A DNA stretch of 64,000 nucleotides from the NCBI RefSeq assembly GCF_030144855.1, contig NC_082708.1, positions 170,562,001-170,626,000 on the forward strand, given 5' to 3'. Below, in pieces: positions 19,001 to 62,495 of the stretch. Within the stretch, counting starts at the first letter, position 1. Each line of letters opens with the position of its first letter. The notes beneath the pieces are model-generated. The model was not told the origin of the DNA. It worked only from the letters and a program-made list of their open reading frames with translations, and made no database searches. This DNA comes from Hypanus sabinus (taxonomy: Eukaryota). A program made the translations under genes and the position numbers.

Positions 19001-19004
19001 ATTT

Positions 19005-19793: not shown

Positions 19794-19799
19794 TACCAA

Positions 19800-23486: not shown

Positions 23487-23488
<2 letters not shown>

Positions 23489-23561
<73 letters not shown>

Positions 23562-42255: not shown

Positions 42256-45250
42256 TATATAATCCCACAAGAGACATGCTGACTGTCATTAGAGAGATAC
42301 TTAATTTCCTTAACCTTCTGAGGAAGCAGGGGTTTTGGAGTTCTTTCCTGCTCATCACATCTAGAACACAGTTTGTCACTGGATCAGGACAAGTTGTTGC
42401 TGATATTTAGACCTGGTACCTGACACTTTCAATTTGCTCCACCTCAGCAACATTAAATAGGCATAGACTGGGACAGGATCTCCTGAAGTCAATGACTTAG
42501 TTATTCGGTTTTATGACATTAAGGGAAAGGTTGTGTGTTGACACTGTGTCACAAGATTCACCAACTTCTTTGTGTGTGTTGCTCTGGACTTCCAGCATCT
42601 GCAGAATCTCTTGTGTTAATGCATCATTTGTGTTAACCAAACGCATCGAAGGACATGTCGTTTATATGTGGTTTTGGAATGTCCCATTCTTTTTGTAATA
42701 TGATATCAACTGAAATGTCAGGGGTATTGATGGGGTGGATGGCAGGAAACAACCTCTTCTGTGCACAATTCTAGATGCATCGGTATTGGAGAGGTGTGAT
42801 TGCACTAGAGAGGGTCCAGTGCAGATTTCCAATGATATTGTCAGCACTGGAAAGTTGCACCAGTGAGGAAAGATTGAATAACCTGGCATTGTTTTCTATG
42901 GAATAGAGAAAGCTGAGGAGAGATTTAATTGATGTAAATAAATTTTTAGCAGTCAAAATAGAGTAAAATAGGAAGGACAATCTTCCCTTAGCAGAGGGTA
43001 GTAGAGGCAGTGGTGGTGGGGTGTGGTCAAAAAACAGAGACAAACATGCAAAGTCATTGGAAGTAGGGTTGGATTGCGTGGTGAGAGGGAGATAAGGCCT
43101 TTCTCAAATAGAATCAAGAATTCAAACAGCACTTATGCAGTTCAAACTTATGAAAGTATGTATACATCATGCAACCTTGAGATTTTTCTGCTTACAGGCA
43201 GCTAAGAAACAAGAAAACTGAAAGAACCCAGTTTAAAAAAAAAGAAAGACCAAGACCCAATCCTCAGAGAAAGAGAAAAAAACTCAAATCATATAAACAT
43301 AAACAATCCAAATCAAATTGAGTCCATAGCTCCAAATCCCCGGAGCATCCAAACCAGGGAGAAATCTTCAGTCTCAGTTCATCATAGTACCTGGACAAAT
43401 CACAGTGAAGCTTGTAGACATGAAACACAGCAGCCAAAGAGTTCACAGTATCATCACTGGAGAGAGAGGAGTGAATATCGTTGGGAAGCATGAAAAATCG
43501 GCCCAACCCTTGCCTCTGTTCCCTACACCCTGCCTTTCCAGCTCATCTGAGCCAGTGTTTAAATTGTCCAAATACAGAAATGCATCCCATATTCAGACCC
43601 ACGCCCCGGCACAGCAATACTCTCATGGTCTAGTCCTTGCCCTCCAGCCCAAATCCATTCTCAACCTCTCCAAATTGGCTCGGTGCTCAGAGCAATCGAA
43701 TTTCGCACATGGCTTAGGTAGATGGGGATCATATCTTCTCTGCCTCGACTCCTCCTCACTCCAACTCCATCTCTCAACAGTGACGCCATCTCCATCTCAA
43801 ACATGTTATGTTTCAAATCTGATTCAGCTTCATTTCTGCTTGCCTTTTTATTGTTTGCAACAATTTACTTCAGAAAATAACTTTGTAATAATGTTCTCAG
43901 TCAAATTACTTGCCTTTTGAACTACCAGTCAGCTGTCACTTGTCTGACACAGAAGGCTCTGGAATTCTCTCCTTGAAGAACTAGTTGAACTGAATATGAA
44001 GTTGAAAAGTTGTGACTTAGTGTTTTAGGTCAAGGGTGGGAAATCTGAATAAGGCTGCATGTTTCTTTATGACACACATCTGGATGATGGGCTGAATTGC
44101 CTCTATCTGTCTTGTAATTTTTCTTCTAGTTTGTGTTCTCCTTTCGACCAGCATGATAGTACTATTTAGCCTCTAACTTCTCTTTGAAGAAAGAGTTTGG
44201 TCACAAAGCTCCCAAATTTAGCTTAAACCATGTGAGCTACTGAACCATAAATCTATTCTTGTCATTAACCAAAAAAAAGAGAATGGTAATTTTCTCATTT
44301 CCATTTCCCTAACACCCAAGCCCAAACATCGCCATTTTTTCCTTCAGTATGATTTATAGAATCATAGAAACATAGAAAACCTACAGCACAAATACAGGTC
44401 CTTCAGCCCACAATGCTGTGCCGAACAATTACTTACTTTTGAAATTACTAGGGTTGCCTACAGCTATCTATTTTTCTAAGTTCCATGTATCATGAATGAA
44501 TATTATGAATGGATTTTAGCCAATGATCAGGCATGGTCTTACCGAGTGATGATAGTACACAGTTAGGGGCTGAATAGCCTGTTCCTGATCCTATTTCCTG
44601 CATTCACAAACTGACTTCTGAAACAGAGTTGTCCTCAACTTGAGTTTGTTTGTTTTTTTCTTTTTGATCAGCAGTGAAAACACTGCTTAGAATGTATTGC
44701 TCTAGACTCTCTTGGAAATGGACATCACTGGTATGGTGGCTGTTGTATATTGGTTGTTCTGACTGAAAGGCAAATTCAGCAGCTTCATCCAAAGTTCATG
44801 TTGTACCTTCCATTCACTCTACTGTGGTTCTTTGTATTGGGATTTGGTTATCATGAACAACACTTTTCTGAAACTTTCAAAGTCTTTGATGCTCTGTCAA
44901 TGTTCAGTCCCACCTCCTACTTTATTATTTCCTGGTACTTTTAGCCCCAAAGACAACTTTCTAAATCACAGTAATTTGAACTATTAATTTTCACCTTGCC
45001 CTTGATTGTGATGATCTTTATGCATTGAAGTACTAAAGTAATGCTTAATTGGTAAATGATATTCAGATTGGAATCATGTTTTGAATCAATTAAGTATTTA
45101 TAAAATTAAAATGTTGGGGTTATGGACTGACCTCAGGAGGATCATGAGTAGTACAGTTTGAGAATTCATTATAATGGTTTAGAAAATATAATTGGAATTC
45201 AACAAATTAGCAAAATTAATATATTCCAGCGCACTGATCATTTTTGTGGG

Positions 45251-45257
45251 TATAAAA
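45251..45257 (+). promoter_or_regulatory. TATA box of the oxytocin-like gene
   Basis: TATAAAA 78 bp upstream of the ATG, matching the short 5' UTR of OT/VT genes. Confidence 0.75.
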
Positions 45258-45328
45258 AGAGAGCAGAAGGGAAGTTGCTCAGAACAGTTTGGAACGTTTC
45301 CTGTGTCCAGATACATCAGGAGAACATC

Positions 45329-45448
45329 ATGCAGTCTACTTGCCTCATCGTTGCACTCCTCTGTCTCATCTCCTTCTCTTCAGCTTGCTACATCAACAAC
45401 TGTCCCATCGGAGGCAAAAGATCCATCGTGGACATGGAGATCAGACAG
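45329..45448 (+). CDS. OXT: Oxytocin-family prepro-hormone exon 1: signal peptide, nonapeptide CYINNCPIG, GKR, neurophysin 1-9
   Basis: MQSTCLIVALLCLISFSSA-CYINNCPIG-GKR-SIVDMEIRQ; 120 coding nt; phase-0 donor CAG|GTAAGG. Confidence 0.97.
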
Positions 45449-46009
45449 GTAAGGAGTAAATTTCTTCACATCTTTGATAATAATGCCTTGTAAGGGAATA
45501 ACACCTTTATTATTCAAAGGACTTTTTACAATTGGAAAACCGGTACAAATATTGAAATTTCTGTCGACTTGAAGATCGTACAGGGTTCTTTTCATGTTCC
45601 ACAGAGATTCATTCGGATAGTTCTTAAGCAAGGGTGGCTTCCAACCAGGTAGTCGGTGTTGTAAGAATCAGTGATCTGACCTTGTTCCGTAAAGACACTG
45701 AATTCAAATCCCCTCATCAAAACCCGTGGTTTCAGTGTGTCATTGAAAATGATACTTGACTCTCCAAACAGTTTTTTTTTGCAATTCCATAAAATGGATA
45801 AATCTAAAATTATCTCATGGAAATTTACTAAATAATTCTGAGAAAGGTGGAAGTTTCAGTGCCCGGTTATGTCTAAGCAAAGTGCAGTGTGACGTAATTG
45901 GAAGAAATGTACAGAATTCAGAACCACTGATATTGAGCAGGGGTTTCACTTTAAGAGGCTGCTCTGACATGATGATGGTACCACACAGAGAGTTTTGGCA
46001 CCTTTTTTG

Positions 46010-46390
46010 GTGTTTAGATGTTGGAGTTCAATAAAATGCATTGTGGGTTTCATAAAACATAAAATGCCCCACTTTATTTTATTTGTAAAAACCTACATTG
46101 GTAACCACAATACATTAGGATGATTCCAGAGTTATTGAACATGTTGCCCGGTGCAGTTGCTTTGAAACTGCTGGAGTTTTGGGAGCCAAATGCTGTCAGT
46201 TGGTTTCTGCGAGAAATCACAGCCAATGACAACAAATTCTACTACATGATGGAGTCCCTCATCAACTGCATGGTTGTGAAATTGTTAAGTGAGCTTGAAC
46301 ATGATAAATAGCGATGGCTGAAAACAGTTGCTCCCCTTGCCTAGCTTCGGCAATGCGAGGCTTTCGGAGCTAATAGACCACAAGCTAGAA
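46010..46390 (+). mobile_element. Gypsy remnant (LTR end, PBS, gag start); matching LTR piece at 52283-52366
   Basis: ...AAACCTACA-TTGGTAACC followed by VALKLLEFW..A.SWF..FYY gag; the LTR segment recurs at 52283-52366. Confidence 0.6.
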
Positions 46391-46683
46391 GGGCTGATTG
46401 ATAAGTTCATAGCCTAAGGAAGAAGGAGTCAATTTTAAAAAACCTAGCACATTTATTTTTCAAACATAGTCCCCTCCTACATTTACACAGTTAGTCCAGT
46501 GGTCGTGGAGCATACGGATCTTGGACCTCCAGAAAGTGTCCACAGCATGGGTGATTGATAGGTTCGTGGCCTAAGGTAGAAGGAGATGAGATAATAACTT
46601 CAAACTTTCTGCATGTGCATGTAACAAGAGCTGTATAACTCATCTGTCTACCTTAGGCCACAAACTTATCAAACACCCCTGTA
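46390..46683. mobile_element. Mariner-type MITE with three TIR copies
   Basis: GGG(C)TGATTGATAAGTTCRTRGCCTAAGG at about 46390 and 46549, with an inverted copy at about 46651-46681 ending in TA. Confidence 0.65.
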
Positions 46684-46749
46684 TTTCTCCTTGTTTTCAA
46701 TCAAAATTGTTTTATTTTTAAATAACTCTTCATTCAGCATGTTGCTGGC

Positions 46750-49700
46750 ATCTGGGTCTATTGACTGGAAATCCATACACAATTGATCAAGTGGCCCCAC
46801 AATTTGCAAGTGGGACAATGAAGCGGCCCTTGTAGGCTGCATCTTCTTCTGTATACATCAAATGCACGACTTGCAGTACTCTTCAACCTCTGGCTACATT
46901 TGGGGCCAGTAGGACCGATCTCTGAGAAATCTGTAGGTTTTGCCAACCCCCATATGGCCATAATCATCATGAAATAACTTTAATGCAATCCCTTGATACT
47001 TCTCAACCAGAACCAGCTGGAAATGCCGAGGGCCGCACAGAGGCGATGAGATCTGGTACAGCATCTGCTTCCTCAATGCCAATCTGGGTCATTCTCTCAG
47101 TAGTAGAGGCACCACAGAGTGTTTCATCTTGTTTGTTTGGGCTGTGTCCCCCTTCGCAACTGCTGACCAAACAGTACCAATACACGGGTCTTCTTGCTGA
47201 GCAGCTGCCACTTCCCCAGGGCTCAATTCTGGCAACTGCTTTGGTTTCAGAGTGGTCAGGGTGCAGTAAGCTTGTGGATTGGCACCATCAGAAGCTCCCA
47301 AATGATCTACCACTCGATTCTGCCCTTGTCTTTCCTCTGCCTTCCCCGTGATGGAAATCTGGCACATGGCATTGACTTCAGGGGCAGGAATGCTCTTTCA
47401 CTCTCCGTCCCTGTCCAGCCCTTCATGTGCATGTTGGGACAACGTCATCAATATTCCAACTTCCTGTCCAGTACTTCAGGCTGAAATCATAGGCAGACAA
47501 CGATGCCAACCACCGACGACCTACAGCATCCAATTTCGCCGAGGTTAGGATATAAGTTAATGTGTCCTTCCTCACCTCGAACTTGACACCATTTAGATAG
47601 ACGCTTAGCTTGGCCACCACAGCACAGTTCAATGCCAGGAACTCTAATTTGTATGTGGGGTAGTTTCACTCAGAAGGTGACAGACTCTGGCTGACAAATG
47701 CAGCAGATCTCAACCCTGTGCCCTGATCCTGATACAGAACATGCCCTAAGCTCTCTCTGTTGGCATCTGTTTGCAAAACATATGGCAACTGGGGGTCTGC
47801 AAAAACCAGCACAGGCACTTTCGTCAGCAGCTCCTTCAGCAACTGAAATACCTCTTTGCATTTGAAGTTTTGTCCTTGCCGACTGGGTCTGAATAAACCA
47901 ATGCTAATATATCAAGGTCTGCACCTACTCCAACACCGGCCTCCAAAAACTCCAGCTTCAAATACAAGTAACTATTGTACAGATAGTCATCTGTACTAAG
48001 ACCCCAGATCTCTAGCGCACTGAGTGACATCAATGGTAAATGAGTTAAATACCAGTTGGAAAACAAACGGTACAGCAAAGTAACCTGAGAGTCGAGATCA
48101 AGTAGGGCTCAAGCATAAATACCCTCAATCAGTAGCAATACACTAGAGCTTGGCCCCCTCTAAGTTTTCAGGGATAGGGTTGTTTGCTACTGTGCCACAA
48201 GCTCCTATACCACTGCCTGAGGTGAGTTATCAGTGGTCACTTCAGCCAAGAGGGCTACTACCAAAGACTGTACCCTGCTGATGGAGGCTGCCCACACCTC
48301 CATCGCATTCTCTTCCTCTCTTACTTCTCTGATCAGCTCAACAAACAAGGGTTCTGGGCACATCTTATGAGAGATTCAGAGATCCTAAGCGATCAGGTCC
48401 GGTGACTGGGTGCCTTTCACCACTTGGTCCATTCTGAACTGCTTCACATTAACTGTGAGAGAGGCAAGCAATTCAGCTGCTTCTCTAACACAAAAATGTA
48501 AGATAGAAACATAGAAGACCTACATCACAATACAGGCCCTTCAACCTACAAAGCTGTGCCGATCATGTCCTCACCTTAGAAATTTCGTAGGCTTACCCAT
48601 AACGCTCTATTTTTCTAAGCTCCATGTAGCCATCCAGGAGTCTCTTAAAAAACACTATTGTTTCCACCTCTACCACCGCCACCGGCAGCCCATTCCATAC
48701 TCTCACCACTCTCTGTATAAAAAAAAACCTACCCCTGACATCTCTTCTCTACCTACTTCCAAGCACCTTCAAACTGTGCACTCTCGTGCTAGCCATTTCA
48801 GCCCTGAGAAAAACCTCTGACTATCCACACAATCAATGCCTCTCATCATCTTATACACTTCTATCAGGTCACCTCTCATCCTCTGTTGCTGAAAGGAGAA
48901 AAGGCCGAGTTCACTCAACTTATTCTCATAAGGTGTGGTCCCTAATCCAGGCAACATCCTTGTAAATCTTCTCTGCACCCTTTCTATCCTTCCTTCCACA
49001 TCCTTCCTGTAGTGAGGCAACCAGAACTGAGCACAGTACTCCAAGTGGGGTCTGACCAGGGTCCCATATAGTTGCAACATTACCTCTCAGCTCCTAAACT
49101 TAACCCCATGATTGTTGAAGACCAATGCACCGTATGACTGCTGAACCACAGAGTCAAACTGCGTAGCAGTTTTGAATGTCCTATGGACTTGGACCCCAAG
49201 ATCCCTCTGATCCTCTACACTACCAGGAGTCTTGCCATTAATGTTATATTCTGCCATCATATTTGACCTACCAAAATGAACCACCTCATACTTACCTGGG
49301 TTGAACACTATCTGCCAGTTCTCAGCCCAGTTTTGCATCTTATCAATTTCCCGCTGTGACCTCTGACAGCTGTCCACACTATCCACAACGCCTCCAACCT
49401 TTGTGTCAACAGCAAATTTACTAACCCATCCCTCCACTTCCTCATCCAGGTCATTTTTTTAAAAACCAGAAAGAGTACGGGTCCCAGTGCAAATCCCTGA
49501 GGCACACTAATGGTCACCGACCTCAAGCAGAATATGACTCATCTACAACCACACTTTGCCTTCTGTGGGCAAGCCAGTTCTGGATCCACAAAGCAATCTC
49601 CCCTTGGATCCCATGTCTCTTTACTTTCTCAGTAAGCCTTGCATAGAGTACCTTATCAAATGCCTTGCTGAAATCCATGTACACTACATCTACTTCTCTA

Positions 49701-52282
49701 CCTTCACCAATGTGTTTAGTCATATCCTCAAAAAAAATTGAATCAGGCTCATAAGGCACAACCTTCCTTTGACAAAGCCATGCTGACTACTACTAATCAT
49801 ATTATGCCTCTCCAAATGTTCATAAATCTGCCCTCTCAGAATCATTTCCATCAGCTTATCAACCACTGAAGTAATACTCACTGGTCTATAATTTCCTGGG
49901 CTATCTGTACTCCCTTTCTTGAATAAGGGAACAACATCCATAACCCTCCAATCCTCCGGAACCTCTCATGTCCACATTAATGAAGCAAAGATCATCACCA
50001 GAGGCTCAGCGATCTCCTCTTCCCTTTTCCTACCTATGTCGTTGCTACCAATACATAACATGACCTCTGACTTTACTCCTTCCCACTTCAGGATATCGTG
50101 GGCGCGATCAGAAACATCCCGGACCCTAGCACCTGGGAGGCAAACTACCATCTGCGTTTATTTCCTGCATCCCTACCCTTCTGAGCACCAGGGGCAGACT
50201 CTGTGCCAGAGGTATGGCCTCTGTTTCCCCCAGCTAGGCTGTCCCCAACCCCCCCCCCCATACAGTACTCAAGCAGGAATACTTATTGTTAATGGGACAG
50301 CACCAGGGGTACTCTCTAGCCTCTGACCCCTGCCTTTCCCTCTCCTGACTGTTACCCACTTATCTGTCTCCTGAGGCCCCGGTGTGGCTACCTACCTGTA
50401 GCTCCTACCTATCACTTCCTCACTCCCCCTGACCAGACAAAGGTTATCGAGGTGCATTTCCAGTTCCCTAATGTGGCCTCTAAGGAGCTGCAGCTTGACG
50501 CATCTGGCACAGATGTGGCCATCTGGGAGGCTGGGAGTCTCTAGGACTTCCCACTTCTGACACCCAGTACAGAACACCGGCCTCACACACATACTTCCTG
50601 TCTGTATTCTATACAGGTAACTTACCTCACCTCGACCTGCTGTCGTCAAAGCCCTGTTGAGCCAAAACCCTCCTATTCTGTCTCCAGCTACTCTGTCAAC
50701 CCCTCCTCCAGCACCCACTCTATCAAGCTGTCTCCTTTTAAACTCTTCTCCTTGTTCTACCTGGCTGACATCCACGTGCTTTTGCACATGAACCACAGAA
50801 GTAACAAAGAAGTTCTGTGTCTTTATGGATCTCACTATGTCAGCAGCCGCCCCCCTCAGCCATTCAACTAATCACTGTCAATCAGAGCACTGCCCCTCAT
50901 CCAGCATCTGAAAAGTCACTTCACTCAAGTCTCAGATTCCTCTTCCCACTTGGGGGTGGGCTTCACTGCTCAGAACATTCTCAGCTTTCGATAACTAGGA
51001 CCCCCCCTACCTATGCACTTTGCTAATTATTTGCCAGGGAGGTAAGGGCTTATACCAAGTCAGAATTCTCACTCCTCGCTAGAGGACTTGTTTGACATCC
51101 CAAATCAGACCACAACTTCCCCTTGCTAAGCACAAAGCAGGGTAACCTGTTTTTGAAGTCCCCACCCCCAGATACGGGAGACTTGGCCTCTGATTTTGTA
51201 CACTCGCCTACACTCTCCTCCTCTGGGAAAGTATAGACAGCACACTGCCCCTCCCATCTACCGAGGCCCCAATAGTACCAGGCAGTTCCACTGCCATTAC
51301 GTCAGCGCTAGTCTGAGATAAAACAATGCCTTTGCCCATCAGTTTATCAAACCTCTGCTCCACAATAGCAACTGCTCCTACTGATTTAATGGTACTTAAA
51401 GTTTGAGTTAATAATTTGTTGGGAATACAAGTGTCAACCCCACTCAATGCACATGCATTCGTTACCAGTAACCTCATGGATTCACACCTCTGCCCAACCC
51501 TGTACAACATCCATTACCATGGATCGTAATCACTTTACCAGACAGAGTTTAACACAGGCTTAAGCACACAACTCACTGGATCAATGCTCAGGACAATCAC
51601 ACAGCATCCAACAAAATCGAACCTGGATGATAACCCCACAATGAAATCCTCTGATTTCCTCGGCTACAGAAGTCTAGGGAAAACACTCTCCAGTCCCACC
51701 AAACTCGTGAGATGGAGACAGCTCTCCAACCACAAAATCTGGTTTATGTGGCTGCTGTGTAATTTGCTATCGTGTTACAAATTAGTGCCATGAAATAACA
51801 GTACATTGCATACCATGAAAGAATTATATTTATGAATCTTAACTTCACTAAAGGGTTAGTAAAGAAAAACAAAGAAAAGGACCCATAGTAATTAAACAGT
51901 CAAATGTGCACGAATTGGAGCTCATCTTGAACTTCTCAGTCAGTCACGTGCTGGGCCCTTGGTCAGTGTGAAAGTCCACACCACCTCCCGAATGTCACTT
52001 GCAATCCATCTCGATCAAACGGGTCTCCCACTGGGTTGTAAACTATGATCAGTTCTCCCCAGTGTCTCTCCCTTCATCTCCCGCAGAACCTAAAAAACAC
52101 TGAGACCAACCTTAGAGACCCTCACCAAGAAGACCTCCCCCTAACTGGATGGCACACATTCCACATCACCCCTTACCTTTAACAATAACCCAAACAGGCT
52201 GAAAGCAGAACAGACTGCTCTTACAGAACTGCTCAATGAAATACATACAGCAAAGCAGTAAAGATGTGAACCAGGCATTACA
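46750..52282 (-). mobile_element. Gypsy LTR retrotransposon with PNMA-like gag, deleted and interrupted by CR1
   Basis: 5' LTR 52282-51642; gag about 51500-51050 and 48500-48250; protease about 48150-47900; RNase H (KLEFLAL..LTYILTSAKLDAVGRRWLASL); integrase zinc finger (LFHDDYGHMG..T..YWPQM). Confidence 0.75.
48500..50780 (-). mobile_element. CR1 LINE with ORF1 (Zn finger/esterase) joined by deletion to RT and the 3' end
   Basis: CTGC..HICARC; VVCLPGARVRDVS..IGSNDIG; PGNYRPVS; MDFSKAFDKV; LVRPHLEYCAQFW. Confidence 0.9.
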
Positions 52283-52639
52283 TTAGGTTTTGGAGTTCAA
52301 TAAAATGTGTTTCAGGTTTCATTAAACATAAAACCCCTCAATTTCATTTTATTTATGAAAACCTACAAAAGTGTCTAGAGTAGACTGGAATGGAATTCTA
52401 TTTCCAAGATAGTTTAGTGGTAGTTTGTGTGTAACAGGAAGCTGTCTGGTCAAAGAAGTCAATAACTGAGAGAGATAATTCATAGCAACAGATGATATTG
52501 ATCAAATGGACAAACTGATTCTAAAGAGTCTAAGTGGTATTAATCATCGCTCAACTGGAAGATGAATTTTCATATGATTTTGCTTTTAATATATTCTAAA
52601 ATGATCAAAATTTGATCTAACTTATTTTTCTAAAAATAG

Positions 52640-53600
52640 AACATAACAATTAGGAGCTGATTTAGGCCATTTTGCCCATCGGGTCTGCTCCACAATTTTA
52701 TCACAGCAGATCTAAATTCCTCTCGATCCCAATCTCCTGTTTTCTCCCCATATCCCTTCATGCCCTGACCAATCAAGAATCAATCAACTTCTGCACTAAA
52801 TACACATAAAGACTTAGCCTCTACAGCTGCTTGTGGCAGAGAATTCCACAGATTCACCACTCTCTGCCAAAGAAATTCCTCCTCATCTTTGTTTGAAAAG
52901 GTCACCGTTCTATTCTGAGGATGTGTCTCCACAATAGGGAGCATCCTCTCCTTATCCACTGTATCAAGGCTTTTTACCTTACAATATGTTTCAGGGAGGC
53001 CACCCCTCATTCTTCTGAATTCCAGTGAAAACAGGCCCAGAGCCATTAAAAGCTCTTCATATGATAAGCTGCTCAATCCAGGATTCACAAAAAAAATCTC
53101 TCAAAATTTAGTTGATTTGGTCCTGTACATCACAGATAATACCCTCCCAACCATCGAGCATATTGACATCAAATGTGGACAAAGAAATACATCACCCTCA
53201 CCACCTAGACCATGCTCTTTTCTCACTGCTGCTATCAGGAAGGAGGTACACGCGCCTCAGGACTCGCATCAGCAAGTTCAAGAACAGTTACTACCCCTCA
53301 GCCATCAGACTCTTGAGCAAAAGGGATAACTACACTCATTCAGTTTCTGGTGTACCCACAACCAATGGTCTCATTTGAGCACTCTATCTTCTAATTTCAT
53401 GTCCTTCCATTTCATGTTATTTCATACTTTTTATTTATTTCTATTTATTTATATTAACATTTGTACAGTTTGTTGTTCATTGATCCTGATTACAGTTACC
53501 ATTCTATAGATTTGTGAAATATGCCTGTAGGAAAATGAATCTCAGGGTTGTATGTGATGACATGTTTGTACTCTGGTAATAAACTTTGCCTTGAAATTTG
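52640..53600. mobile_element. CR1 3' fragment (minus) and Rex1/Babar 3' fragment (plus)
   Basis: LEFRRMRG..QRVVNLWNSLP; HALFSLLLSGRRY...FKNSYYPSAIRLL. Confidence 0.75.
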
Positions 53601-54365
53601 AGAAAGCACAGGGATAATGTAAATGAGTGTTTGATGGTTCATGTGGACTCAATGTGTCAAAGGGCCTGTTTCCAAGCTCTGTGGTTCAAAAACTCTGTAA
53701 AACACTTCTTGCAAATTTAATCAGTGTCACCAACTTACAAAAACGGTGCAACAAGAGAGACTGTAAATGTGGCGAATCTGGATCAGGAACTACAAACTGC
53801 TGGAGGAATCCAGCAATTCGAGCAGCATCCGTGGAGGCAAAAGGATCTCAACCCAACACTCCAACTGTCTCTTTGCCTCAATCGATGTTGCTCAACCTGC
53901 TGAGATCCTGCAGAAATCGGTTCTGTTGTTCATAACAAAAAAGATTTTCTTTAGAACTCAGTAATACAGTAAAACTTTACTCTTTTCATCGAGCACAAGG
54001 TTCAATGCCTGAACGTACAGACCACAAGGCTGACCAACCGCTTCTATCAAACTCTTATAGATTCACTTTATTTGTCACATGTACACCAAACCATTAAATC
54101 ATACAGTGAAGTGTATGACAAATGAACCAGTTTACCAAGTATTATTTATAATTTAGAGTAAGACAGAAACGCTAAAGGGCCAAGACTCTTACTCCATTAA
54201 TTCTTTGTTCCTCTCCATAGTTACTGCCTGACCTGCTGAGTTACTTGAGCATTTTGTCTGTGTTACTCTGGATTCCCAGTATCTGCAGAATCTCTTGTGT
54301 TTATGATTTATTATTTAACTGTCTTTGGGAGTGGCCATGCTGATATATTCTCTGCTCTTTCCCAG

Positions 54366-54570
54366 TGTCTGCCATGTGGTCCTGGCAATAGGGGCCAATG
54401 CTTTGGAAGCAACATTTGCTGTGGGGAGGAGATTGGTTGCTACATTGGAACTTCTGAGACATTGCGGTGCCAGAAGGAAGTCTACCTGCCCTCACCCTGT
54501 GAACCCTCAGGCAGGATCTGTGGCAGGAATGGTGGAAAATGTGCCACAGCAGGAATCTGCTGCACTTCTG
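54366..54570 (+). CDS. OXT: Oxytocin-family gene exon 2: neurophysin core
   Basis: Acceptor TCTTTCCCAG; [68 protein letters not shown]; 205 nt; phase-1 donor G|GTGAG. Confidence 0.97.
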
Positions 54571-55668
54571 GTGAGAGGTTTACTCCTTATCACACACTCT
54601 TTCAACGAACGTGAAAATTCCAAAACAATCTTAGCTGTCAAGTTGAAAGTAATGTATGGTCAATTTTGTCCTACAGGTCAAACATACCACAGATATAGCT
54701 GGAAATCTATCATATTAGAATACAGAACATAGAACAGTACAGCGCAATACAGGCCCTTCAGCCCATGATGTTATGCTGATCTTTTAACCTATGGAGGAGG
54801 TAGGGGTGTTCCACAGTGAATAATTTGCTTCAGTATTCGTCAGTGAGGGGAACTTGTTGAATGTGAGTTCAGCGTAGAACGGGATGATTTGCTGGAACAT
54901 GGTGATGCTCAGTAAGTCTGTGATGGAAGTACTGAGAATTCTATGATAGATAACTCCCTGGAACATCCACTTTCTTAACTTCAACATGTTCAAGCATGTT
55001 AGTCTGTTCTGCACTGATCTCACAGTTGTCAGGGTCCCTCTTGCCGGTGAATACTGAATCAGAGTATTCATTCAGGTCTTCCACGACTACGTTGATCTTA
55101 TTCTCCCTCTTACAGTGATTTGCTGTTGATCACTTATGCCCACATCACCCGAGCTGAAAATCTGAAATAAGTTGGACAATACTGGAAACACTCAGCAGGT
55201 GAGGCAGCTATAGAAGGAGAATCAGAGCAAACACTTCAGGTCCATGACACTTTGTCTTTAGACCTGAATCATTGACTTTATTCTCAATCCACAGATGCTG
55301 CCTGACCCGGTGAGTTTTTCCACCATTTTACAGCTCCTCTTGAGAGCAGTTAGGAAATTTTTTTCAGAAACAGTCTGCTGCCTTCTTTTCTTTGTCTTAA
55401 CTTCCAGCATTTCATTGGAGGAAGCACTCGTGATTTATCGACACTGCCTTAGACTTTATAGTGGTGGAGCCAAGCGTTTATCTCTTAATTACTTAATTAT
55501 TGAATTCATTTTTTATATTTGCACTGTTTGTCTTCTGAATATTGCTGTTTGTCAGTCTTTGTCTGAAATATTTAATTGATTCTATTGTATCCCTTTGTTT
55601 CACTGTGAATGCCTGCATGTAAATGAATCTCAGGGTTGTATATGTTAACATACATATACATCGATAAT

Positions 55669-56549
55669 TCTGGGCTCATCCATGCAGATCACATGGCCGG
55701 TCCATCTGAGCTGAGCCTTCAAAACCTTGGCTTCAATGCTTGTGGAATTGGCTCGGTCCAGGACTGTCAGGTTGGAGATACAGTCTTGCCAGCGGATCTG
55801 CATGATTGATCTCAGAGTGCAATTGCGGAAATGTTCAAGCTGTTTGACATGTCTGTGATACAGTGTCCAGGCTTCACAGCCAGACAGAAGTGATGAGACC
55901 ACAACAGCATAGTAAACCTTCAATTTAGTGGAGAGGCGAATGTCATTGTGCTGCAGAACTTTGACCCAGAGCCTCCCAAGTGCCTGGCTTGCTTTTTGGA
56001 TCCTTGACGTGATTTCTTTATCAAGGGCACCGTCGCTGGAGATGGCACTCCCCAGGTATTTGAATTTGTCAACGGAGAATAAGATATGTGTCATCGATGG
56101 TGACGCATGGCTGCGGCGGGGTGCTGTTAGGTGCAGGCTGCAGGAGGAACTCTGTTTTACCGAGGCTGATTGTTCTATGGAGAACTGGAGCAGGGCAACC
56201 ATGCCCAAGGTTGCCCAAGGAAGAGGTACAAGGACAACCTCAATTCAAACCTTAAGTAGGCCAAACTCCAGCCCCGCGATCTCAAACACACTGCTATTGA
56301 TCGGTCCAAGTGGCGCAATCTATGCTCCAAGGCAGCCGATAACTTCCAAGCCAACTGGCGCATGCAGCACCTCAAGGCGAGGCAAGAAAGACACAGGAGG
56401 GTGTCCACTCCTGCCCCAAAAGGCGGTGCTCCTTGCCCCATCTGTACCCATACCTGCGCTTTGGACTTCAGCCTCAGAAGTCATATGCGTGCCCACAAGC
56501 GTTGACTGCGCAACACATTCGTCTTCCTCGGACTTTGAGAGACTACTAC
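55669..56549 (+). mobile_element. RTE-clade LINE, 5'-truncated with a 5' inversion, 12-bp TSD
   Basis: 55669-56170 is minus-strand RT (FKYLGS..RIQKASQA..QLRWTGHV..MDEPRI). 56171-56549 continues on plus (LFYGEL..KRYKD..CPIC..SHMRAH*) with an (ACT)n tail. TSD TACATCGATAAT / TACATCAATAAT. Confidence 0.9.
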
Positions 56550-57499
56550 TACATCAATAATAAATTTATTTTGAAATTAGAACTTCAGAGTTCACGCCAG
56601 GAAAACTTTGGACAGATTTTTTCTTCACTTTGAACCTGGGATTAAAGTGGGGAGGAAATGCATATTCTTTATCACACTCAGCAGAGGACTGAGGTTTGCC
56701 ATCTTTCCCAAAGAGAATCTGACTCTGTATCATGAAGCAATGGTGACAATCTACTCCTGGGTGAGCTGGATATGAACACATGATTGCTTTAACTTACGGT
56801 GAAGGCAGAGAGCCGACCAGTTACTCCAAGGTCACATCTAGGAGAGGCTCAGTCTGTTTTATCTGGTGGAAAGCAAGTTAAATGTGGACATGACTAAGGT
56901 ATATAATATTATGAGAGGTATGGACAGGGTCTGAGTAGCTGTTTGCATGCTGTAGCGGCCACAACCCAGTACACTTTATCGACAGGCAGGGTAAACCAGG
57001 TGAGGGTAACCAATGGGTTTCATATCCCAGTGACATGCCTGTCCTAGAATGCAAAGACATCTTTGCTGGTCTGGGAGGATAAGATCAACAGTGAGATCTA
57101 ATATCTAGGAAGTCAGTTCTGCAATGCTTTGTGGAGAGTGAAAGGCACAATAAGGTACAGCAGTCAAGGCCATCCATTGCAATCAAGTAAGAGTCCAGTT
57201 GTGACGATGACTGATACCACTGGACCAAGATTTCTGAGGCTGAGAGAGTGGAACAGCCCCAGTGCAATGGCTTTTCCTTTGTAAAAACTTTCCACACAGG
57301 TTTCTTCATGCAATTCACATTAGATGAACAACACAAATCGAACTATCATTGAAAGATACGACAGACAAACAAATCAAATGATCAATCACTAAAGGTGCAG
57401 GATGTGGTTTCCCATACCAGAGGTAAGTAAAACTAGAGGACATAAATCTGGGATCACATGTTAATGATCCAGAGTGGATTTGTAAGCACTGGGCAGTAT

Positions 57500-57965
57500 G
57501 GATAATGTATGAGAAGTGTTTAATGGGTCTGGGCCCTTTAGGAGAATGAGGGGAGGGTGGAATCTCGTTGAAACCTTTCAAATATTGAAATGCCTGGATA
57601 GAATGGATAGAGTGTATAGAGTGGATGTGGAGAGAATGTTTCCAATAGTTTGAGAGTCTCGGACCAGATGGCACAGTCTTAAAATACAAAGATGACCCTT
57701 TAGAGCAGAGATGAGGAGGATTTTTTTTTAACCATAAAGAGGGTGAAGAATCTGTGGAATTCACTTCAACAGACAGTTCTGCAGACTAACTCTGGTAGAG
57801 GTGGAAGCAGAGTCACTGCCGGTATTTACAAAGCATCCAGATGAGAACTTGAATTGCAGAGACAGTGGAGGCTACATGTCAGCTGACAGAAGATGGGATT
57901 AACACAGAAGGGTCAGTGTGGACGAGTTGGGCCAAATGGCTTATTTCCATGCTGTATGACTCTGT
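57500..57965 (+). mobile_element. CR1 3' fragments
   Basis: Typical CR1 C-terminus and 3' UTR sequence. Confidence 0.6.
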
Positions 57966-58090
57966 GACTATTCACATAATGGATAGATCAATCGTCTGTC
58001 AGTCATGGCACTGACCGTGGCAATCTGAACAAGTACATGGATATGATTCACAATCCGTATTGAAAAGTGAAAATTCAAAGTTGTTTATTA

Positions 58091-59252
58091 TGTGGCAACC
58101 CACGTTCTGCGCAGGCGAACTAGCTCACAAATAGCCAGCGCACGGGGGGAGACTTTGGTAATGCACCTCTGACATCATTTCCGCCCGGAGAGGGCGGGCG
58201 CTAGGGATTAAATTCCAGCGCCGCAAAGTTTGAATAAACTAGTCTCGAAATGACTTACCGACTGCATGTCGTTATTTCAGTGCTGTGTGTAGCACATCGC
58301 TACATTGGTGACCCGGACAGACCAAACGGGATTTGGACCAAAGATGACCGACTCTTCATCTGTTCACGCAGTTTCGCTAAAACTGCCGACTTTCTGGATG
58401 CTGTGACCACACGTGTGGTTTAGTCAAGCAGAAGCCCAGTTCCAGATTCGGCAGATATCTTCTGATTCCACGCGTTACTACTACATGGTGAGCGCCCTTG
58501 ACCAGGAGATGGCCGCCCAGGTTGCGGATTTCATACAGTTGCCCCTGGAAGAAGGCAAATATGAAGCATTCAAAGCGCTGCTCATTGAGTCCTTTGGCCC
58601 CTCGCTGCGTGAGTGGGGTGCTCACCTGCTTCACCTGGACGGTTTGGGAGACAGGCTGCCTTCAGCATTGATGAATGAGATGCTGGCTCTGGCTGACGGA
58701 CACAAGCCCTGCCTTATGTTCGAGCAAGCGTTCCTAGAGCAACTGCCCGAGGACATACATCTGCTGCTGGCTGACGCAGACTTCAGTGACCCCCGGAAGG
58801 TGGCAACCCGGGCAGACGCGCTGTGGAAAGCCGAGAGAGAGAGTGGCGTCCGTCAGTCGGATTACCATGCCACGCACCCAACAGCGGACCAGACCAGGCC
58901 CGGCAGGGTGGCGCACAAAACACAGCGGCAGGAGTGAGGAGACCAGTGAACAGTGGTGTTTCTACCACCAGCGGTGGGGCACAAAAGGCTGCTGTTGTTG
59001 CCTGCCCTGCAAGGGCCAGGTCCAGGGCCAGCTGCTGCTAATGGCTATGGTGGCTGGCCACCAGGACAGACCCTTGTACGTCTGGGACAAATAGCCAAGG
59101 TGCAGCGGCACACGATAGCCCCGCCGCAGCAGTTCGAACCCACCCACCACCCACCACCCACTTCACCGCTGCGAAGTTTGAATAAACTAGTCTTGAAATG
59201 ACTTATTGACTGCATGTCGTTATTTTAGCGCTGTGTGTAGCACATCGCTACA
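58091..59252 (+). mobile_element. Small gag-only Gypsy (Mag-like) LTR element
   Basis: LTR 58091-58284 (TGTGG..CTACA); PBS TGGTGACC; gag (VSLKLPTFW..WFSQAEAQF..CFYHQRWG); partial 3' LTR about 59166-59252; ATTA TSD. Confidence 0.85.
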
Positions 59253-59479
59253 ATTATCGTATTATGTATATGTCACGGTATACCACCCTGAGATTCTTTT
59301 TCTTGCAGGCATTTAAGGAAAAATAAAGAAATACAGCAAAATTAATGGAATCAATACATAAATAAGCACACACAAAATGTTGGTGGAATGCAGCAGGTCA
59401 GGCAGCATCTATAGGAAGAAGTACAGTTGACATTTCAGGCTGAGACCCTTCGTCAGGAACCAATAAACAACCGATGTGC

Positions 59480-61740
59480 AAAATAATTTCCCGATGGTAG
59501 ATTTTGCAGGGGGCTGGGAACTGGAGCCCCAGGTCAGTAAGGAAAAGATCGGATCAGAAGGTAGATGTCAGGAAAAGAATTGAAAGGCAAAATCAAAATA
59601 ACAGGTACAATGGGTCAGATAGTTTGAAGTGTGTATATTTCAATTCTGGGTATATTATGGGTAAGGGTGATGAACTGAGACCATGCATCGGTACATGAAA
59701 CTACAGTATGGTAGGCATTACTGAAACTTGGTTGAGAGAGGGGCCAGAGTGGGTGATCAATGTACCAGGGTTCTGAAGTTTTAGAAAAGATAGAGGAGAA
59801 GGAAAAGTGGAGGAGTGGTGTTATGTACTTGTATTGTTGCCTGAATACGTAACAGTGGTTAGTTGCACTACTGTTCAAGGAAAATATCACAGCTGCACTT
59901 AGATGAGACATAACGGAGAGGTGAGACAATAAGTCCATTTGGAGGGAACTCAAGACTAAGAAGGGTGCAATCATGCTGATGGGACTGTATGACCTACCCC
60001 CTGATCGCCACTGGGACACTGAGGAACAGATGATATAATCAGATTAAAGAAAGGCATAAAAATAATAGGGTTGTTGTCATGGAGGATTTCAATTTATCTG
60101 AAGTCACACACTCAGTGATTCAGGAACAGCTTCTTCCTCTCTACTATCCAATTTCTAAATGGACATTGACCTGTGAACAGTACTTTACTTGCACGATTTT
60201 TAATCTATTCAATATACACATACTGTAATTGATTTACTTATTTATTATTATCTTTTTTCTTCTTCACCTATATTAGGTATTGCTAATTTAATAAATTTCA
60301 TGACACATAATAAATCTGATTCTGATAAACTGCGACATGTTTTGTGTAAGGGATTTAGATGGAGCAGAATTTGTTAAGTGTATCCAGGAGGATTTTAAAT
60401 CATCATGTGAGTGGTCCAGAAAGAAGAGGGACAAATTGGGCCTGGTTTTGGGTCATGAGCCTGGCCAGGTTACGGACCTTTCTGTGGGTGAACAGTTAGA
60501 GAACAGTCTGACCACAACATTTTAACTTAGGCCTTGTGTGAGAATTTTAAATTGGAGTTGAGCAAATGATGAGTGCATTAGGCAGGAACTAAGAATTGTT
60601 AATTGTGAACTCCATTTCTCAGGCAATAGTATCTTTGTGTCCACTCTAGACACATGCGAGGTCCTGAAGGACTGTTGTGTCTAATGTTGTAGTGTACCTT
60701 TATTTATGAAGGGAACATGGGAAATTCCTGGAAATACAGTCCAGTGAATCTCACGTCAGTTGCAGGGAAATTGCTGGAGAATATTCTTAGGGATAGGATA
60801 TGTGAGCATCTAAAAACCCATGGCCTAATTAGGAAAGCCAGCTTGGCATCGTGCATGACAGGTCATGCTTGACTAGATTTGTTTGAGTTTTTTGGTTAGG
60901 TGATGGGAGAGATTGATGAGGGTAGGGTAGTGGATGTCGTCTACATGGATTTCAGCAGGACATTTGACAAAGTCACTCATGGGAGGGTGATCGTGGAGAC
61001 TAAGATACATGGGACTTGCGGCGAATTGGCTGTTTGGTATCAGAACTTGCTTGTGCATAGAAGACAGGGGGTGGTGTTTGAAGGGACTTATTTGAGCAGG
61101 AGTTCCGTAATTAGTAGAATTCCTTAGGAATCTGTGCTGGAATCTCTGCTGTTTGCTATGTATATAAGTGACCTGGATGAAAATGTATTTGGGTTGGTTC
61201 GTTAATATGCATATGATACCAAGATTGGTGGATTTGTGGATAGTGTAGACTGGTAAAGAATACAACATGATACACAACAGTTGCAGATATGGGCTGAGAA
61301 ATGGCGGATGGAGTACCCAGGTAAATGTGAGGTGTTGCACCTCGTTAGGGCAAATGCAAAGAGAGAGTACACTGTTAAGGGAAAGATTCTTAACAGTGTT
61401 GCTGAGTAGAGTGATCTTGGGATCCAAGTTCGTAGTTCCATGAAAGTGGCTAGAGGGGTCAAAATGTGGTTAAGAAGGCTTGTTTTTATTAGTCGAGGCA
61501 TTGAGTGCAAATGTCAGGACGTTATTTTGCAAATTTACAAAAGTCTGGTTAGGCTACACATGAGTCAAATATTTTAGAGACTTTTACGAGATGTTGGACA
61601 GGCACATTGGTGGAGGGAATATGGTGAGATCTAGACATGGTGCAAGTTGGAGCGATGAGTGTTTGGGTGTCTTTGATTTGCTACTTAGCTGGATTGTGGC
61701 CGAATGGCCTGTTCCCATGCTGTACTGTTCTATGCTCTAT
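59480..61740 (+). mobile_element. Old CR1 LINE (APE and RT), decayed
   Basis: LKCVYFN, GITETWL, VVMEDFN and VDVVYMDFSRTFDKV motifs. Confidence 0.82.
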
Positions 61741-62231
61741 CTGCTTTCAGACAACTTAATCAGAAGCTGCATTATCTGATTAAAACTAATTTAAATCATA
61801 ACAATGTTGTCTCCTGAGACATGGAACTGGAATTAATATCCATTTCAGATTAGTGAATAATCTGTGAATAATCTGTGAATAATTAGTGAATAGAACAGAG
61901 AATGCTGGAAATACTTGGCCACTTGGGCAGCAACCAATAGAGAAACTATTAATACTTCAGGTCAGTGTCTTTTTTCTCACAACAGGGAAAACTGAGAGTA
62001 AATGTTTGAACGTTGCTCTGAGCCAGCACTGACTGTCTGGGCTAAGTGTCATCATTTGAGATCATAAGCAATTATAAGTATGACACCATCTGACCTCAAA
62101 TCCCAAGTATCCTGCAGTCTTGTTCTTGCAGTTCCTCCAGTTGAGTGAAGATCATGTAGTTATTGGAGATGGTCTATGTTGGTGTATGTCAATTACAATA
62201 ATGACATTTGTTCTGTTAATTTTTTTTTCAG

Positions 62232-62287
62232 ACAGCTGCACCATGGATCCTACATGTGACACCAGGAATATCTTCTCCGCAAATTAA
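62232..62287 (+). CDS. OXT: Oxytocin-family gene exon 3: neurophysin C-terminus, no copeptin
   Basis: Acceptor TTTTTTTTTCAG; phase 1 gives DSCTMDPTCDTRNIFSAN*, supplying the last two neurophysin cysteines. Not in the ORF track. Confidence 0.93.
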
Positions 62288-62489
62288 TGTGAGCTTCTGG
62301 GTTAAATCTGATCAACAGCACAAGGTCAGAAACTCAGAGTCACTACTGAAAGCTCCAGCCAATTATTGTTCAACACTATCAGTTTTTAATACTGAGTAGA
62401 TAAAAATTACAGACTGTAAAGATCTTCAGACATGCATAGTGTGTGTTAAAGAAATGTGAAATAGTGTAACACTTGTAATAATAATTAAC

Positions 62490-62495
62490 AATAAA
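62490..62495 (+). terminator. Polyadenylation signal of the oxytocin-like gene
   Basis: AATAAA about 200 nt after the stop, followed by T/GT-rich sequence. Confidence 0.7.

What the first reader, a model, noticed from the sequence alone, without database searches (positions are those of the whole stretch)
45386..45421. Apparently unnamed oxytocin-family hormone CYINNCPIG-NH2 ([Asn4,Ile8]-oxytocin)
Seen: an intact three-exon precursor with signal peptide, TGC TAC ATC AAC AAC TGT CCC ATC GGA, a GKR amidation/cleavage site, a 14-Cys neurophysin, TATA box and poly(A) signal. Known: named elasmobranch and related peptides are aspargtocin CYINNCPLG, asvatocin CYINNCPVG, phasitocin CYFNNCPIG, phasvatocin CYFNNCPVG, valitocin CYIQNCPVG, glumitocin CYISNCPQG, isotocin CYISNCPIG and mesotocin CYIQNCPIG. 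This sequence equals none of them. From these codons, one substitution gives isotocin (AAC>AGC), asvatocin (ATC>GTC), aspargtocin (ATC>CTC) or phasitocin (ATC>TTC), so it is a hub connecting four known hormones. It is isobaric with aspargtocin, so mass spectrometry alone would misassign it. Inference: a functional and possibly undescribed neurohypophysial hormone.
Basis: partly seen in the sequence, partly recalled or inferred. Interest (0 to 1): 0.88.

Follow-up and report, generated by a model that had tools for sequence, protein, structure and literature searches.

The report
Stingray oxytocin-family hormone gene, CYINNCPIG
This is an intact, evolutionarily conserved oxytocin-type hormone gene of the Atlantic stingray; its predicted nine-residue hormone (CYINNCPIG-amide) has no name in the literature I could search, but the same peptide is already predicted in public protein records of at least five ray and sawfish species.

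Summary
Window 45329-62287 (+) holds a three-exon, 126-aa precursor: a 19-aa signal peptide, CYINNCPIG, GKR, and a 95-aa neurophysin with 14 Cys and no copeptin. The window is Hypanus sabinus chromosome CM057976.1. RefSeq already models the identical protein as XP_059819404.1, "oxytocin-neurophysin 1-like".

Contigs from four sequencing runs, carrying four different organism labels, show no difference in the hormone codons, so a base error is excluded.

The same nonapeptide is predicted in:
- a second Hypanus gene
- Hemitrygon akajei
- Mobula birostris (two genes)
- Mobula hypostoma
- Pristis pectinata, which uses different synonymous codons

Function is supported by dN/dS of about 0.15, identical splice positions, and a promoter, TATA box and 3'UTR conserved across four ray orders. 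On the gene tree, CYINNCPIG lies on both sides of the basal ray split. It is therefore the most parsimonious ancestral ray peptide, with isotocin (electric rays), glumitocin (skates) and CYINNCPTG (Rhinoraja) derived from it.

I found no name or mention of the peptide in 8.4 million open papers. I obtained no spliced RNA or peptide evidence.

Verdict: a real, ordinary-working oxytocin-family gene. It is a new, unnamed member of a known kind, not unique to this genome, and of moderate interest. This scan holds another first-stage note on the same gene in this window (s1-236373).

The parts
44877..45328 (+). Conserved promoter and 5'UTR region, including TATAAAAA at 45251-45258 (78 nt before the ATG)
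   Evidence: This region aligns at 68-78% identity to the upstream regions of the orthologues in Pristis, Narcine, Rhinoraja and Amblyraja. The block GGGTATAAAAAG(A/G)GAG ... GGAAGTTGCTCAG..CAGTTTGG is near-invariant. Most intron sequence does not align in the three more distant orders.
45329..45385 (+). Signal peptide, 19 aa (MQSTCLIVALLCLISFSSA), with the predicted cleavage after Ala19
   Evidence: It has a hydrophobic core and small residues at -3 and -1. The A|CY junction is kept in all 17 oxytocin-family orthologues. No formal predictor was run.
45386..45412 (+). Nonapeptide hormone CYINNCPIG
   Evidence: Four runs show no differing letter here. Pristis encodes the same peptide with synonymous codon differences: TGT TAC ATT AAC AAC TGC CCC ATA GGA.
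45413..45421 (+). Gly-Lys-Arg: amidation donor and dibasic cleavage site
   Evidence: GGKR is invariant in all chondrichthyan oxytocin-family precursors compared.
45422..45448 (+). First nine residues of neurophysin (SIVDMEIRQ), up to the end of exon 1 (phase 0, donor GTAAGG)
   Evidence: Four orthologues have the same donor position and sequence.
45449..54365 (+). Intron 1 (8.9 kb), rich in transposable elements
   Evidence: The orthologous intron is 2.4 kb in Pristis and 1.7 kb in Amblyraja.
54366..54570 (+). Exon 2 (205 nt): the central neurophysin, with 12 of the 14 Cys
   Evidence: It is 80-88% identical at DNA level to the other ray orders. It is covered by the Pfam PF00184 match (residues 39-117).
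54571..62231 (+). Intron 2 (7.7 kb), donor GTGAGA, acceptor t-rich tract plus AG
62232..62287 (+). Exon 3 coding part: (D)SCTMDPTCDTRNIFSAN plus the TAA stop at 62285-62287. It holds the last 2 Cys and no copeptin.
   Evidence: The orthologues have the same acceptor position.
62288..62520 (+). 3'UTR with AATAAA at 62490-62495
   Evidence: The alignment to Narcine ends at 62496 and the one to Amblyraja at 62520, at or just past the AATAAA; those to Rhinoraja and Pristis run on to 62600 and 62656. The exact poly(A) site is inferred.

Best explanation
This is a functional oxytocin-family (neutral neurohypophysial hormone) gene of the Atlantic stingray, Hypanus sabinus.

Inferred mechanism, following the established pathway for this family:
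- The 126-aa prepro-hormone enters the secretory pathway through a 19-aa signal peptide.
- The nonapeptide folds into the binding pocket of its own 14-Cys neurophysin and forms the Cys1-Cys6 disulfide.
- A prohormone convertase cuts after Lys11-Arg12, and carboxypeptidase E trims the basic residues.
- Peptidylglycine alpha-amidating monooxygenase converts Gly10 into the C-terminal amide. The product is CYINNCPIG-NH2, that is [Asn4,Ile8]-oxytocin.
- The peptide would be released from hypothalamic neurosecretory neurons and act on oxytocin/vasotocin-type G-protein-coupled receptors.

Shown here: the gene anatomy, family membership, sequence accuracy, purifying selection, conserved promoter and 3'UTR, and the peptide's presence in Myliobatiformes and Rhinopristiformes.

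Inferred, not shown: transcription and splicing in this species, the processing steps, and the target receptor and physiology.

Phylogenetically the peptide is most parsimoniously the ancestral batoid form. Isotocin of electric rays (Asn4>Ser), glumitocin of skates and CYINNCPTG of Rhinoraja would derive from it.
For: - Gene model with canonical splice sites, 126 aa and 14 Cys.
- The identical 126-aa product is on record as XP_059819404.1, 'oxytocin-neurophysin 1-like' [Hypanus sabinus], on CM057976.1. Locus L001 maps to window 45329.
- Pfam Hormone_5 at E=1.4e-27. Bovine neurophysin I at E=1.5e-34, with the cysteines aligned.
- No differing letters across the hormone codons in contigs of four runs.
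- The same nonapeptide is in Hypanus copy 2, Hemitrygon akajei, Mobula birostris (two genes), Mobula hypostoma and Pristis pectinata. Pristis uses different synonymous codons at positions 1, 3, 6 and 8.
- Pairwise dN/dS is 0.10-0.25; Hypanus against Pristis gives 0.16 with dS 0.38.
- Splice positions and phases are identical in four orthologues.
- About 450 nt of promoter, including the TATA box, and the 3'UTR to at least the AATAAA are conserved across four ray orders.
- In the gene tree the protein lies inside the oxytocin-family clade, separated from vasotocin with 100/100 support. The batoid clade has 97/94 support.
Against: - No spliced RNA was seen. The runs labelled 'RNA?' that hold exon 1 or exon 2 carry contigs running 6-130 nt into the introns, so they look genomic or unspliced. 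No RNA run of this species with the transcript was offered.
- The mature peptide has never been isolated, as far as I could find.
- Hypanus has two near-identical copies. Which copy is expressed, or whether both are, is unknown.
- The signal-peptide cleavage site was judged by inspection only.
Confidence: 0.9

Rival explanations
1. The window's copy is a redundant, transcriptionally silent duplicate. The other Hypanus gene (XP_059819405.1) would make the hormone, and this one would be intact only because the duplication or a gene conversion is recent.
For: There are two 126-aa genes on the same chromosome, differing at 2 residues. They are sisters in the tree (97/84). No spliced RNA was obtained for this copy.
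Against: This copy keeps the full ancestral promoter, TATA box, splice sites, 3'UTR and poly(A) signal, collinear with the single-locus orthologues of four orders. It has no disabling change. Multiple active oxytocin-family genes appear common in elasmobranchs: there are at least five distinct protein models in Amblyraja and two peptides in Scyliorhinus torazame.
Confidence: 0.07
2. The unusual nonapeptide is an assembly or sequencing error at codon 3, 4 or 8, and the true peptide is a named one such as aspargtocin, asvatocin or isotocin.
For: None was found.
Against: Contigs from four independent runs show no other letter between 45372 and 45518. Six further gene models in five other species encode the same peptide, including Pristis with different synonymous codons.
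Confidence: 0.01
3. The gene is as described, but the peptide is not new. It would already have been isolated, named or synthesised in literature outside the searchable open-access library, for example older work by Acher's group or Hyodo's group in General and Comparative Endocrinology.
For: Most comparative-endocrinology papers on elasmobranch neurohypophysial peptides are in subscription journals that the tool does not hold. Stingrays (Hemitrygon akajei) are an active osmoregulation model (PMC12496175).
Against: 'CYINNCPIG' occurs in 0 of about 8.4 million papers. Searches for Asn4 + Ile8 + oxytocin and for stingray + neurohypophysial gave nothing relevant. The table in Gwee et al. 2009 does not list it. 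The five papers from 2017 on that use any of the six elasmobranch peptide names, the latest from 2023, were seen only as titles and abstracts, and none suggests a new elasmobranch peptide. RefSeq names are generic: 'neurophysin 1-like', 'mesotocin-neurophysin MT-like'.
Confidence: 0.15

Closest known systems
Aspargtocin, CYINNCPLG-NH2 (Squalus acanthias; also encoded in Scyliorhinus torazame P0007)
   Same: Same oxytocin-family scaffold with Asn4. Identical except at position 8, and isobaric. Same precursor architecture of 126 aa with no copeptin.
   Different: Leu8 instead of Ile8 (one base, ATC against CTC). Found in sharks, not rays.
Asvatocin, CYINNCPVG-NH2 (Scyliorhinus canicula, Triakis scyllium; encoded in Carcharodon and Chiloscyllium models)
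   Same: Asn4 and an aliphatic residue at position 8. The precursors are 77% identical to the window's.
   Different: Val8 instead of Ile8. Found in sharks.
Isotocin, CYISNCPIG-NH2 (teleosts; Torpedo marmorata Q91504; Narcine bancroftii)
   Same: Ile8. The torpediniform precursors fall in the same batoid clade (97/94). Narcine uses the same ATC codons at positions 3 and 8.
   Different: Ser4 (AGC) instead of Asn4 (AAC). On the tree, ray isotocin looks derived from CYINNCPIG and therefore convergent with teleost isotocin.
Phasitocin, CYFNNCPIG-NH2 (Triakis scyllium; S. torazame P0008)
   Same: Asn4 and Ile8.
   Different: Phe3 instead of Ile3. It is a second, diverged paralogue in catsharks and houndsharks.
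Glumitocin, CYISNCPQG-NH2 (skates: Raja, Amblyraja, Leucoraja)
   Same: It is the classical ray oxytocin-family peptide, and its gene is orthologous to this locus. Promoter, exons and 3'UTR align.
   Different: Ser4 and Gln8 (AGC, CAA). It is confined to Rajidae among the genomes seen. Rhinoraja, another rajiform, has CYINNCPTG.
Mesotocin, CYIQNCPIG-NH2 (lungfish, amphibians, sauropsids, some marsupials)
   Same: Ile8. The overall precursor is 58-65% identical.
   Different: Gln4 instead of Asn4.

Membership tests
Vertebrate neurohypophysial hormone precursors (vasopressin/oxytocin superfamily) | N-terminal nonapeptide C-[YF]-[IF]-x-N-C-P-x-G directly after the signal peptide, with Cys1 and Cys6 available for a disulfide | tested here: met
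   CYINNCPIG at 45386-45412. It is the only such motif in the six frames of the window.
Vertebrate neurohypophysial hormone precursors (vasopressin/oxytocin superfamily) | Gly-Lys-Arg amidation and dibasic processing signal after residue 9 | tested here: met
   GGC AAA AGA at 45413-45421. It is invariant in the orthologues.
Vertebrate neurohypophysial hormone precursors (vasopressin/oxytocin superfamily) | Neurophysin domain (Pfam PF00184) with 14 conserved cysteines | tested here: met
   PF00184 at E=1.4e-27, 96.8 bits against a cutoff of 27.2, covering profile positions 1-79 of 79. There are 14 Cys. Aligned to bovine neurophysin I (2lbh) at E=1.5e-34.
Vertebrate neurohypophysial hormone precursors (vasopressin/oxytocin superfamily) | Three-exon gene: exon 1 carries the signal peptide, hormone and N-terminal neurophysin; exon 2 the central neurophysin; exon 3 the C-terminus | tested here: met
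   Exons 45329-45448, 54366-54570 and 62232-62287, with GT/AG introns. Positions and phases are the same in Pristis, Amblyraja, Narcine and Rhinoraja.
Oxytocin family (neutral peptides), as opposed to the vasotocin/vasopressin family | Neutral residue at position 8 (the basic family has Arg or Lys) | tested here: met
   Ile8, codon ATC.
Oxytocin family (neutral peptides), as opposed to the vasotocin/vasopressin family | Short precursor without a copeptin extension (non-teleost oxytocin type) | tested here: met
   The precursor is 126 aa and ends 18 residues into exon 3. Chondrichthyan vasotocin precursors are 159-163 aa.
Oxytocin family (neutral peptides), as opposed to the vasotocin/vasopressin family | Groups with oxytocin-family precursors, not vasotocin precursors, in a gene tree | tested here: met
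   The oxytocin-family and vasotocin clades are separated with 100/100 support. The window's protein lies inside the batoid oxytocin-family clade, which has 97/94 support.
Oxytocin family (neutral peptides), as opposed to the vasotocin/vasopressin family | Genomic neighbourhood of the vertebrate OT/VT locus (linkage to the vasotocin gene; UBOX5/FASTKD5 region) | tested here: inconclusive
   There is no vasotocin gene in the 64-kb window. Four ORFs at the window's 5' end gave no Pfam match. An earlier first-stage note (s1-236373) claims FASTKD5/UBOX5 nearby, which I could not verify.
Oxytocin family (neutral peptides), as opposed to the vasotocin/vasopressin family | Expressed in hypothalamic neurosecretory cells, processed to an amidated nonapeptide, and active on an oxytocin-type receptor | not testable with these tools
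   No spliced RNA contigs were found. Peptide chemistry and receptor assays need bench work.
Named chondrichthyan oxytocin-family peptides (oxytocin, isotocin, glumitocin, valitocin, aspargtocin, asvatocin, phasitocin, phasvatocin) | Identity of all nine residues with a named peptide | tested here: not met
   It differs from each peptide in Table 1 of PMC2656470 by at least one residue. The nearest, at one residue each, are aspargtocin, asvatocin, isotocin, phasitocin and mesotocin.

The most novel reading that the evidence does not exclude
CYINNCPIG-NH2 is the ancestral oxytocin-family hormone of all rays (Batoidea), still used by stingrays, mantas and sawfishes. The textbook 'ray' peptides are later single-lineage derivatives:
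- Isotocin of electric rays arose from it by AAC>AGC, independently of teleost isotocin.
- Glumitocin is a Rajidae-only novelty.
- Rhinoraja's CYINNCPTG is a further unnamed offshoot (ATA>ACA).

If so, the classical picture 'rays = glumitocin' describes a minority of batoids. The commonest ray hormone has also never been isolated, partly because it is isobaric with shark aspargtocin.
Probability: 0.6. Interest if true: 0.5.

Novelty: new member of a known kind. Interest (0 to 1): 0.4.

Why it matters
Cartilaginous fishes are the classic puzzle of neurohypophysial hormone evolution. Vasotocin is nearly frozen, while the oxytocin-like peptide varies from lineage to lineage; Acher and colleagues linked this to urea-based osmoregulation.

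All named ray peptides come from skates (glumitocin) and Torpedo (isotocin). The largest ray radiation, the Myliobatiformes, together with the sawfishes, turns out to share a different peptide that has no name. That peptide is probably the ancestral ray form.

This gives a concrete synthetic ligand for receptor pharmacology in euryhaline stingrays such as Hypanus sabinus and Hemitrygon akajei, which are current osmoregulation models. It polarises the direction of change among four or five named hormones. It also warns that mass-only identification would call the peptide aspargtocin.

It changes no concept. The gene works like every other oxytocin-family gene, and under the 2021 universal nomenclature it is simply 'OT'.

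Tried and rejected
- **RNA evidence.** The 'RNA?' runs X1, X25 and X26 hold contigs that run into introns: 45449-45454, 54571-54578 and 54571-54700. They are therefore genomic or unspliced and give no splice evidence. No RNA run with a strong share of exon 2 words was offered.
- **Logan-derived proteins.** Those in the homology search (P0026, P0078 to P0105) are vasotocin or tetrapod mesotocin-type products. None is from a ray oxytocin-family mRNA.
- **Orthologue DNA.** DNA for Hypanus copy 2, Hemitrygon, Mobula and S. torazame could not be fetched ('sample's file is too large'). As a result, the position of copy 2 relative to the window and the codons in those species are unknown.
- **Synteny.** There is no second nonapeptide or neurophysin frame in the window. 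Four ORFs at the 5' end gave no Pfam hit.
- **Literature.** Eight searches found no mention of the peptide. Subscription journals are outside the library.
- **Rejected readings.** A base error is rejected. A pseudogene is rejected. A vasotocin-family gene is rejected by Ile8, the missing copeptin and the tree.

Full report
**1. What is in the sequence**

Window 45386-45421 (+) reads TGC TAC ATC AAC AAC TGT CCC ATC GGA GGC AAA AGA, which is CYINNCPIG-GKR. An ATG at 45329 opens a 19-residue hydrophobic leader, MQSTCLIVALLCLISFSSA. The frame then runs through the nonapeptide, GKR and SIVDMEIRQ to a GTAAGG donor after 45448.

A six-frame scan for Cys-rich frames and for the nonapeptide motif found one of each in the whole 64-kb window.

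- Exon 2 is 54366-54570. It has a tcccAG acceptor and a GTGAGA donor, ends in phase 1, and holds 12 Cys.
- Exon 3 starts at 62232, behind a T-rich tract and AG. It completes an Asp codon and adds SCTMDPTCDTRNIFSAN and a TAA stop at 62285-62287.
- The joined product is 126 aa, with a 95-aa neurophysin carrying 14 Cys and no copeptin.
- TATAAAAA is at 45251-45258 and AATAAA at 62490-62495.

**2. Identity of the window, and whether the sequence can be trusted**

The exact 126-aa product is on record for GCA_030144855.1, chromosome CM057976.1. The fetched locus maps onto window 45329. The cluster look-up names the protein XP_059819404.1, "oxytocin-neurophysin 1-like" [Hypanus sabinus]. The gene is therefore already a public, automatically named model.

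Contigs of four public runs, carrying four different organism labels, were laid on 45150-45650. They show differences in the signal-peptide codons (45370, 45371) and in the intron (from 45519 on). They show none between 45372 and 45518. An error at codon 3, 4 or 8 is excluded.

**3. Family membership**

- Pfam Hormone_5 (PF00184) matches residues 39-117 at E=1.4e-27.
- Bovine neurophysin I (2lbh, 1l5c) aligns over 92 residues at E=1.5e-34, with the cysteines in register.
- Ile8 is neutral and there is no copeptin. In a maximum-likelihood tree of 22 chondrichthyan precursors, the protein sits in the oxytocin-family clade, split from vasotocin with 100/100 support.
- Splice positions and phases match those of Pristis, Amblyraja, Narcine and Rhinoraja.

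Every structural criterion of an oxytocin-family precursor is met.

**4. Evidence for function**

No spliced RNA could be obtained. Exon 1 was searched in runs of any kind and exon 2 in RNA runs; the runs labelled 'RNA?' that came back hold contigs that continue into the introns. X1 runs to 45454, X26 to 54578 and X25 to 54700. This remains the main gap.

Function therefore rests on conservation:

- Pairwise dN/dS among five ray orthologues is 0.10-0.25. Hypanus against Pristis gives 0.16 at dS 0.38.
- Pristis encodes the same nonapeptide with synonymous differences at codons 1, 3, 6 and 8.
- About 450 nt upstream of the ATG aligns at 68-78% in all four other species. The TATA block GGGTATAAAAAG and a putative start-site block GGAAGTTGCTCAG are near-invariant.
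- The 3'UTR alignment to Narcine ends at 62496 and that to Amblyraja at 62520, at or just past the AATAAA; those to Rhinoraja and Pristis run further.
- Introns largely fail to align beyond Pristis.

Together these are hard to reconcile with a dead gene.

**5. Distribution of the peptide**

| Peptide | Where predicted |
|---|---|
| CYINNCPIG | Two Hypanus sabinus genes (XP_059819404.1, XP_059819405.1; 2 aa apart, same chromosome); Hemitrygon akajei XP_072897931.1; Mobula birostris (two models); Mobula hypostoma; the sawfish Pristis pectinata XP_051897442.1 |
| CYISNCPIG (isotocin) | Electric rays Torpedo and Narcine |
| CYISNCPQG (glumitocin) | Skates of the Rajidae (Amblyraja, Leucoraja) |
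| CYINNCPTG | The softnose skate Rhinoraja longicauda |
| CYINNCPVG | Sharks Carcharodon and Chiloscyllium |
| CYINNCPLG and CYFNNCPIG | Scyliorhinus torazame |
| CYITNCPLG | Pristiophorus |

In the gene tree the batoid clade (97/94) splits into Myliobatiformes on one side. On the other side is Pristis, on a very short branch, together with Torpediniformes and Rajiformes. CYINNCPIG occurs on both sides of that split, and Asn4 is shared with sharks. Parsimony therefore makes CYINNCPIG the ancestral batoid peptide.

The codons agree:

- Ser4 is AGC in both Narcine and Amblyraja, one step from AAC.
- Thr8 in Rhinoraja is ACA, one step from the ATA seen in Pristis.
- Gln8 (CAA) needs two steps.

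This is still an inference from a short alignment and eleven batoid species.

**6. Is it known?**

- The string CYINNCPIG is in none of about 8.4 million open papers and preprints.
- Searches combining the elasmobranch peptide names, stingray terms and residue nomenclature returned no report of it.
- Table 1 of Gwee et al. 2009 (PMC2656470) lists eight chondrichthyan oxytocin-family peptides, and none is this one.
- Theofanopoulou et al. 2021 (PMC8081664) propose calling all of them OT.
- Most of the older primary literature is in subscription journals that I could not search. I put about 15% on an existing description.

My assessment: the peptide is unnamed and uncharacterised, but not unseen, because several RefSeq models carry it under generic names.

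**7. Mechanism**

By homology the mechanism is the standard one:

- signal-peptide cleavage before Cys1;
- binding of the hormone to neurophysin within the same precursor, with a Cys1-Cys6 disulfide;
- convertase cleavage after Lys-Arg;
- carboxypeptidase E trimming;
- amidation from Gly10;
- axonal transport to the neurohypophysis, and action on oxytocin/vasotocin-type receptors.

None of these steps was tested here. The physiological role in elasmobranchs (reproductive tract, osmoregulation) is unknown.

**8. Verdict**

The gene is real and almost certainly functional. It is an ordinary member of the oxytocin family encoding a residue combination that has no name, is shared by stingrays, mantas and sawfish, and is plausibly ancestral for rays. 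It is a new member of a known kind. Interest is moderate, because diversity of this peptide in elasmobranchs is expected, the sequence is already public, and no new principle is involved. It would be a useful correction to the textbook 'rays have glumitocin', and it is a ready ligand for stingray receptor work.

Noticed in passing
L005:1614-4990 (Rhinoraja longicauda, XP_078265035.1 / P0116): This is another oxytocin-family nonapeptide that matches no named peptide: CYINNCPTG ([Asn4,Thr8]-oxytocin). Codon 8 is ACA, one step from the ATA (Ile) of Pristis. The gene is otherwise intact, with the same splice sites.
   Followed up: partly
Proteins P0004 (Pristiophorus japonicus) and P0076 (Mobula hypostoma): The Pristiophorus model encodes CYITNCPLG ([Thr4]-oxytocin). 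A Mobula hypostoma 159-aa vasotocin-type precursor encodes CYIKNCPRG (Lys4 instead of the near-universal Gln4) and sits on a long branch (0.57) in the tree. Both are unnamed as far as I know. The Mobula one could be a diverging vasotocin gene or an error.
   Followed up: no
Proteins P0061 (H. akajei), P0109 (M. birostris), P0115 (Leucoraja) and P0116 (Rhinoraja): These RefSeq models look wrong. P0061 lacks exon 1 and has a foreign C-terminus. P0109 reads into intron 2: its tail GERLTLYHALFERM closely matches the translation of the start of intron 2 in the window. P0115 and P0116 carry a 38-aa N-terminal extension that reads through the conserved TATA box (EGYKKG = GAAGGGTATAAAAAGGGA).
   Followed up: partly
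window 54250-54310 (and a similar motif near 55280-55310): A piece of about 60 nt of a very abundant interspersed repeat (core ...ctgcctgacctgctgagtt...) lies just 5' of exon 2. The summed contig depth there exceeds 500,000 in DNA runs of related species, against about 10-20 over the exon.
   Followed up: no
window 45449-54365 and 54571-62231: The introns are 8.9 and 7.7 kb here, against 2.4 and 2.1 kb in Pristis and 1.7 and 1.5 kb in Amblyraja. They are swollen by transposable-element insertions, for example reverse-transcriptase-like ORFs at 49087-49437 (-) and 55645-56208 (-).
   Followed up: partly
window 54448-54700 in runs X8 and X9: In two related organisms, exon 2 and the start of intron 2 are covered by two contig variants at different depth (about 9-13 against 4-5). 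The minor variant has many extra differences. This is consistent with a second, more diverged paralogue in those genomes.
   Followed up: no
window 13333-29200: The region upstream of the gene is rich in retroelements. There is an integrase-like ORF at 16182-17207 (+). A CCHC zinc-knuckle gag-like ORF lies at 21938-22366 (+), and reverse-transcriptase-like ORFs at 25270-25977 (+) and 28709-29143 (+).
   Followed up: no
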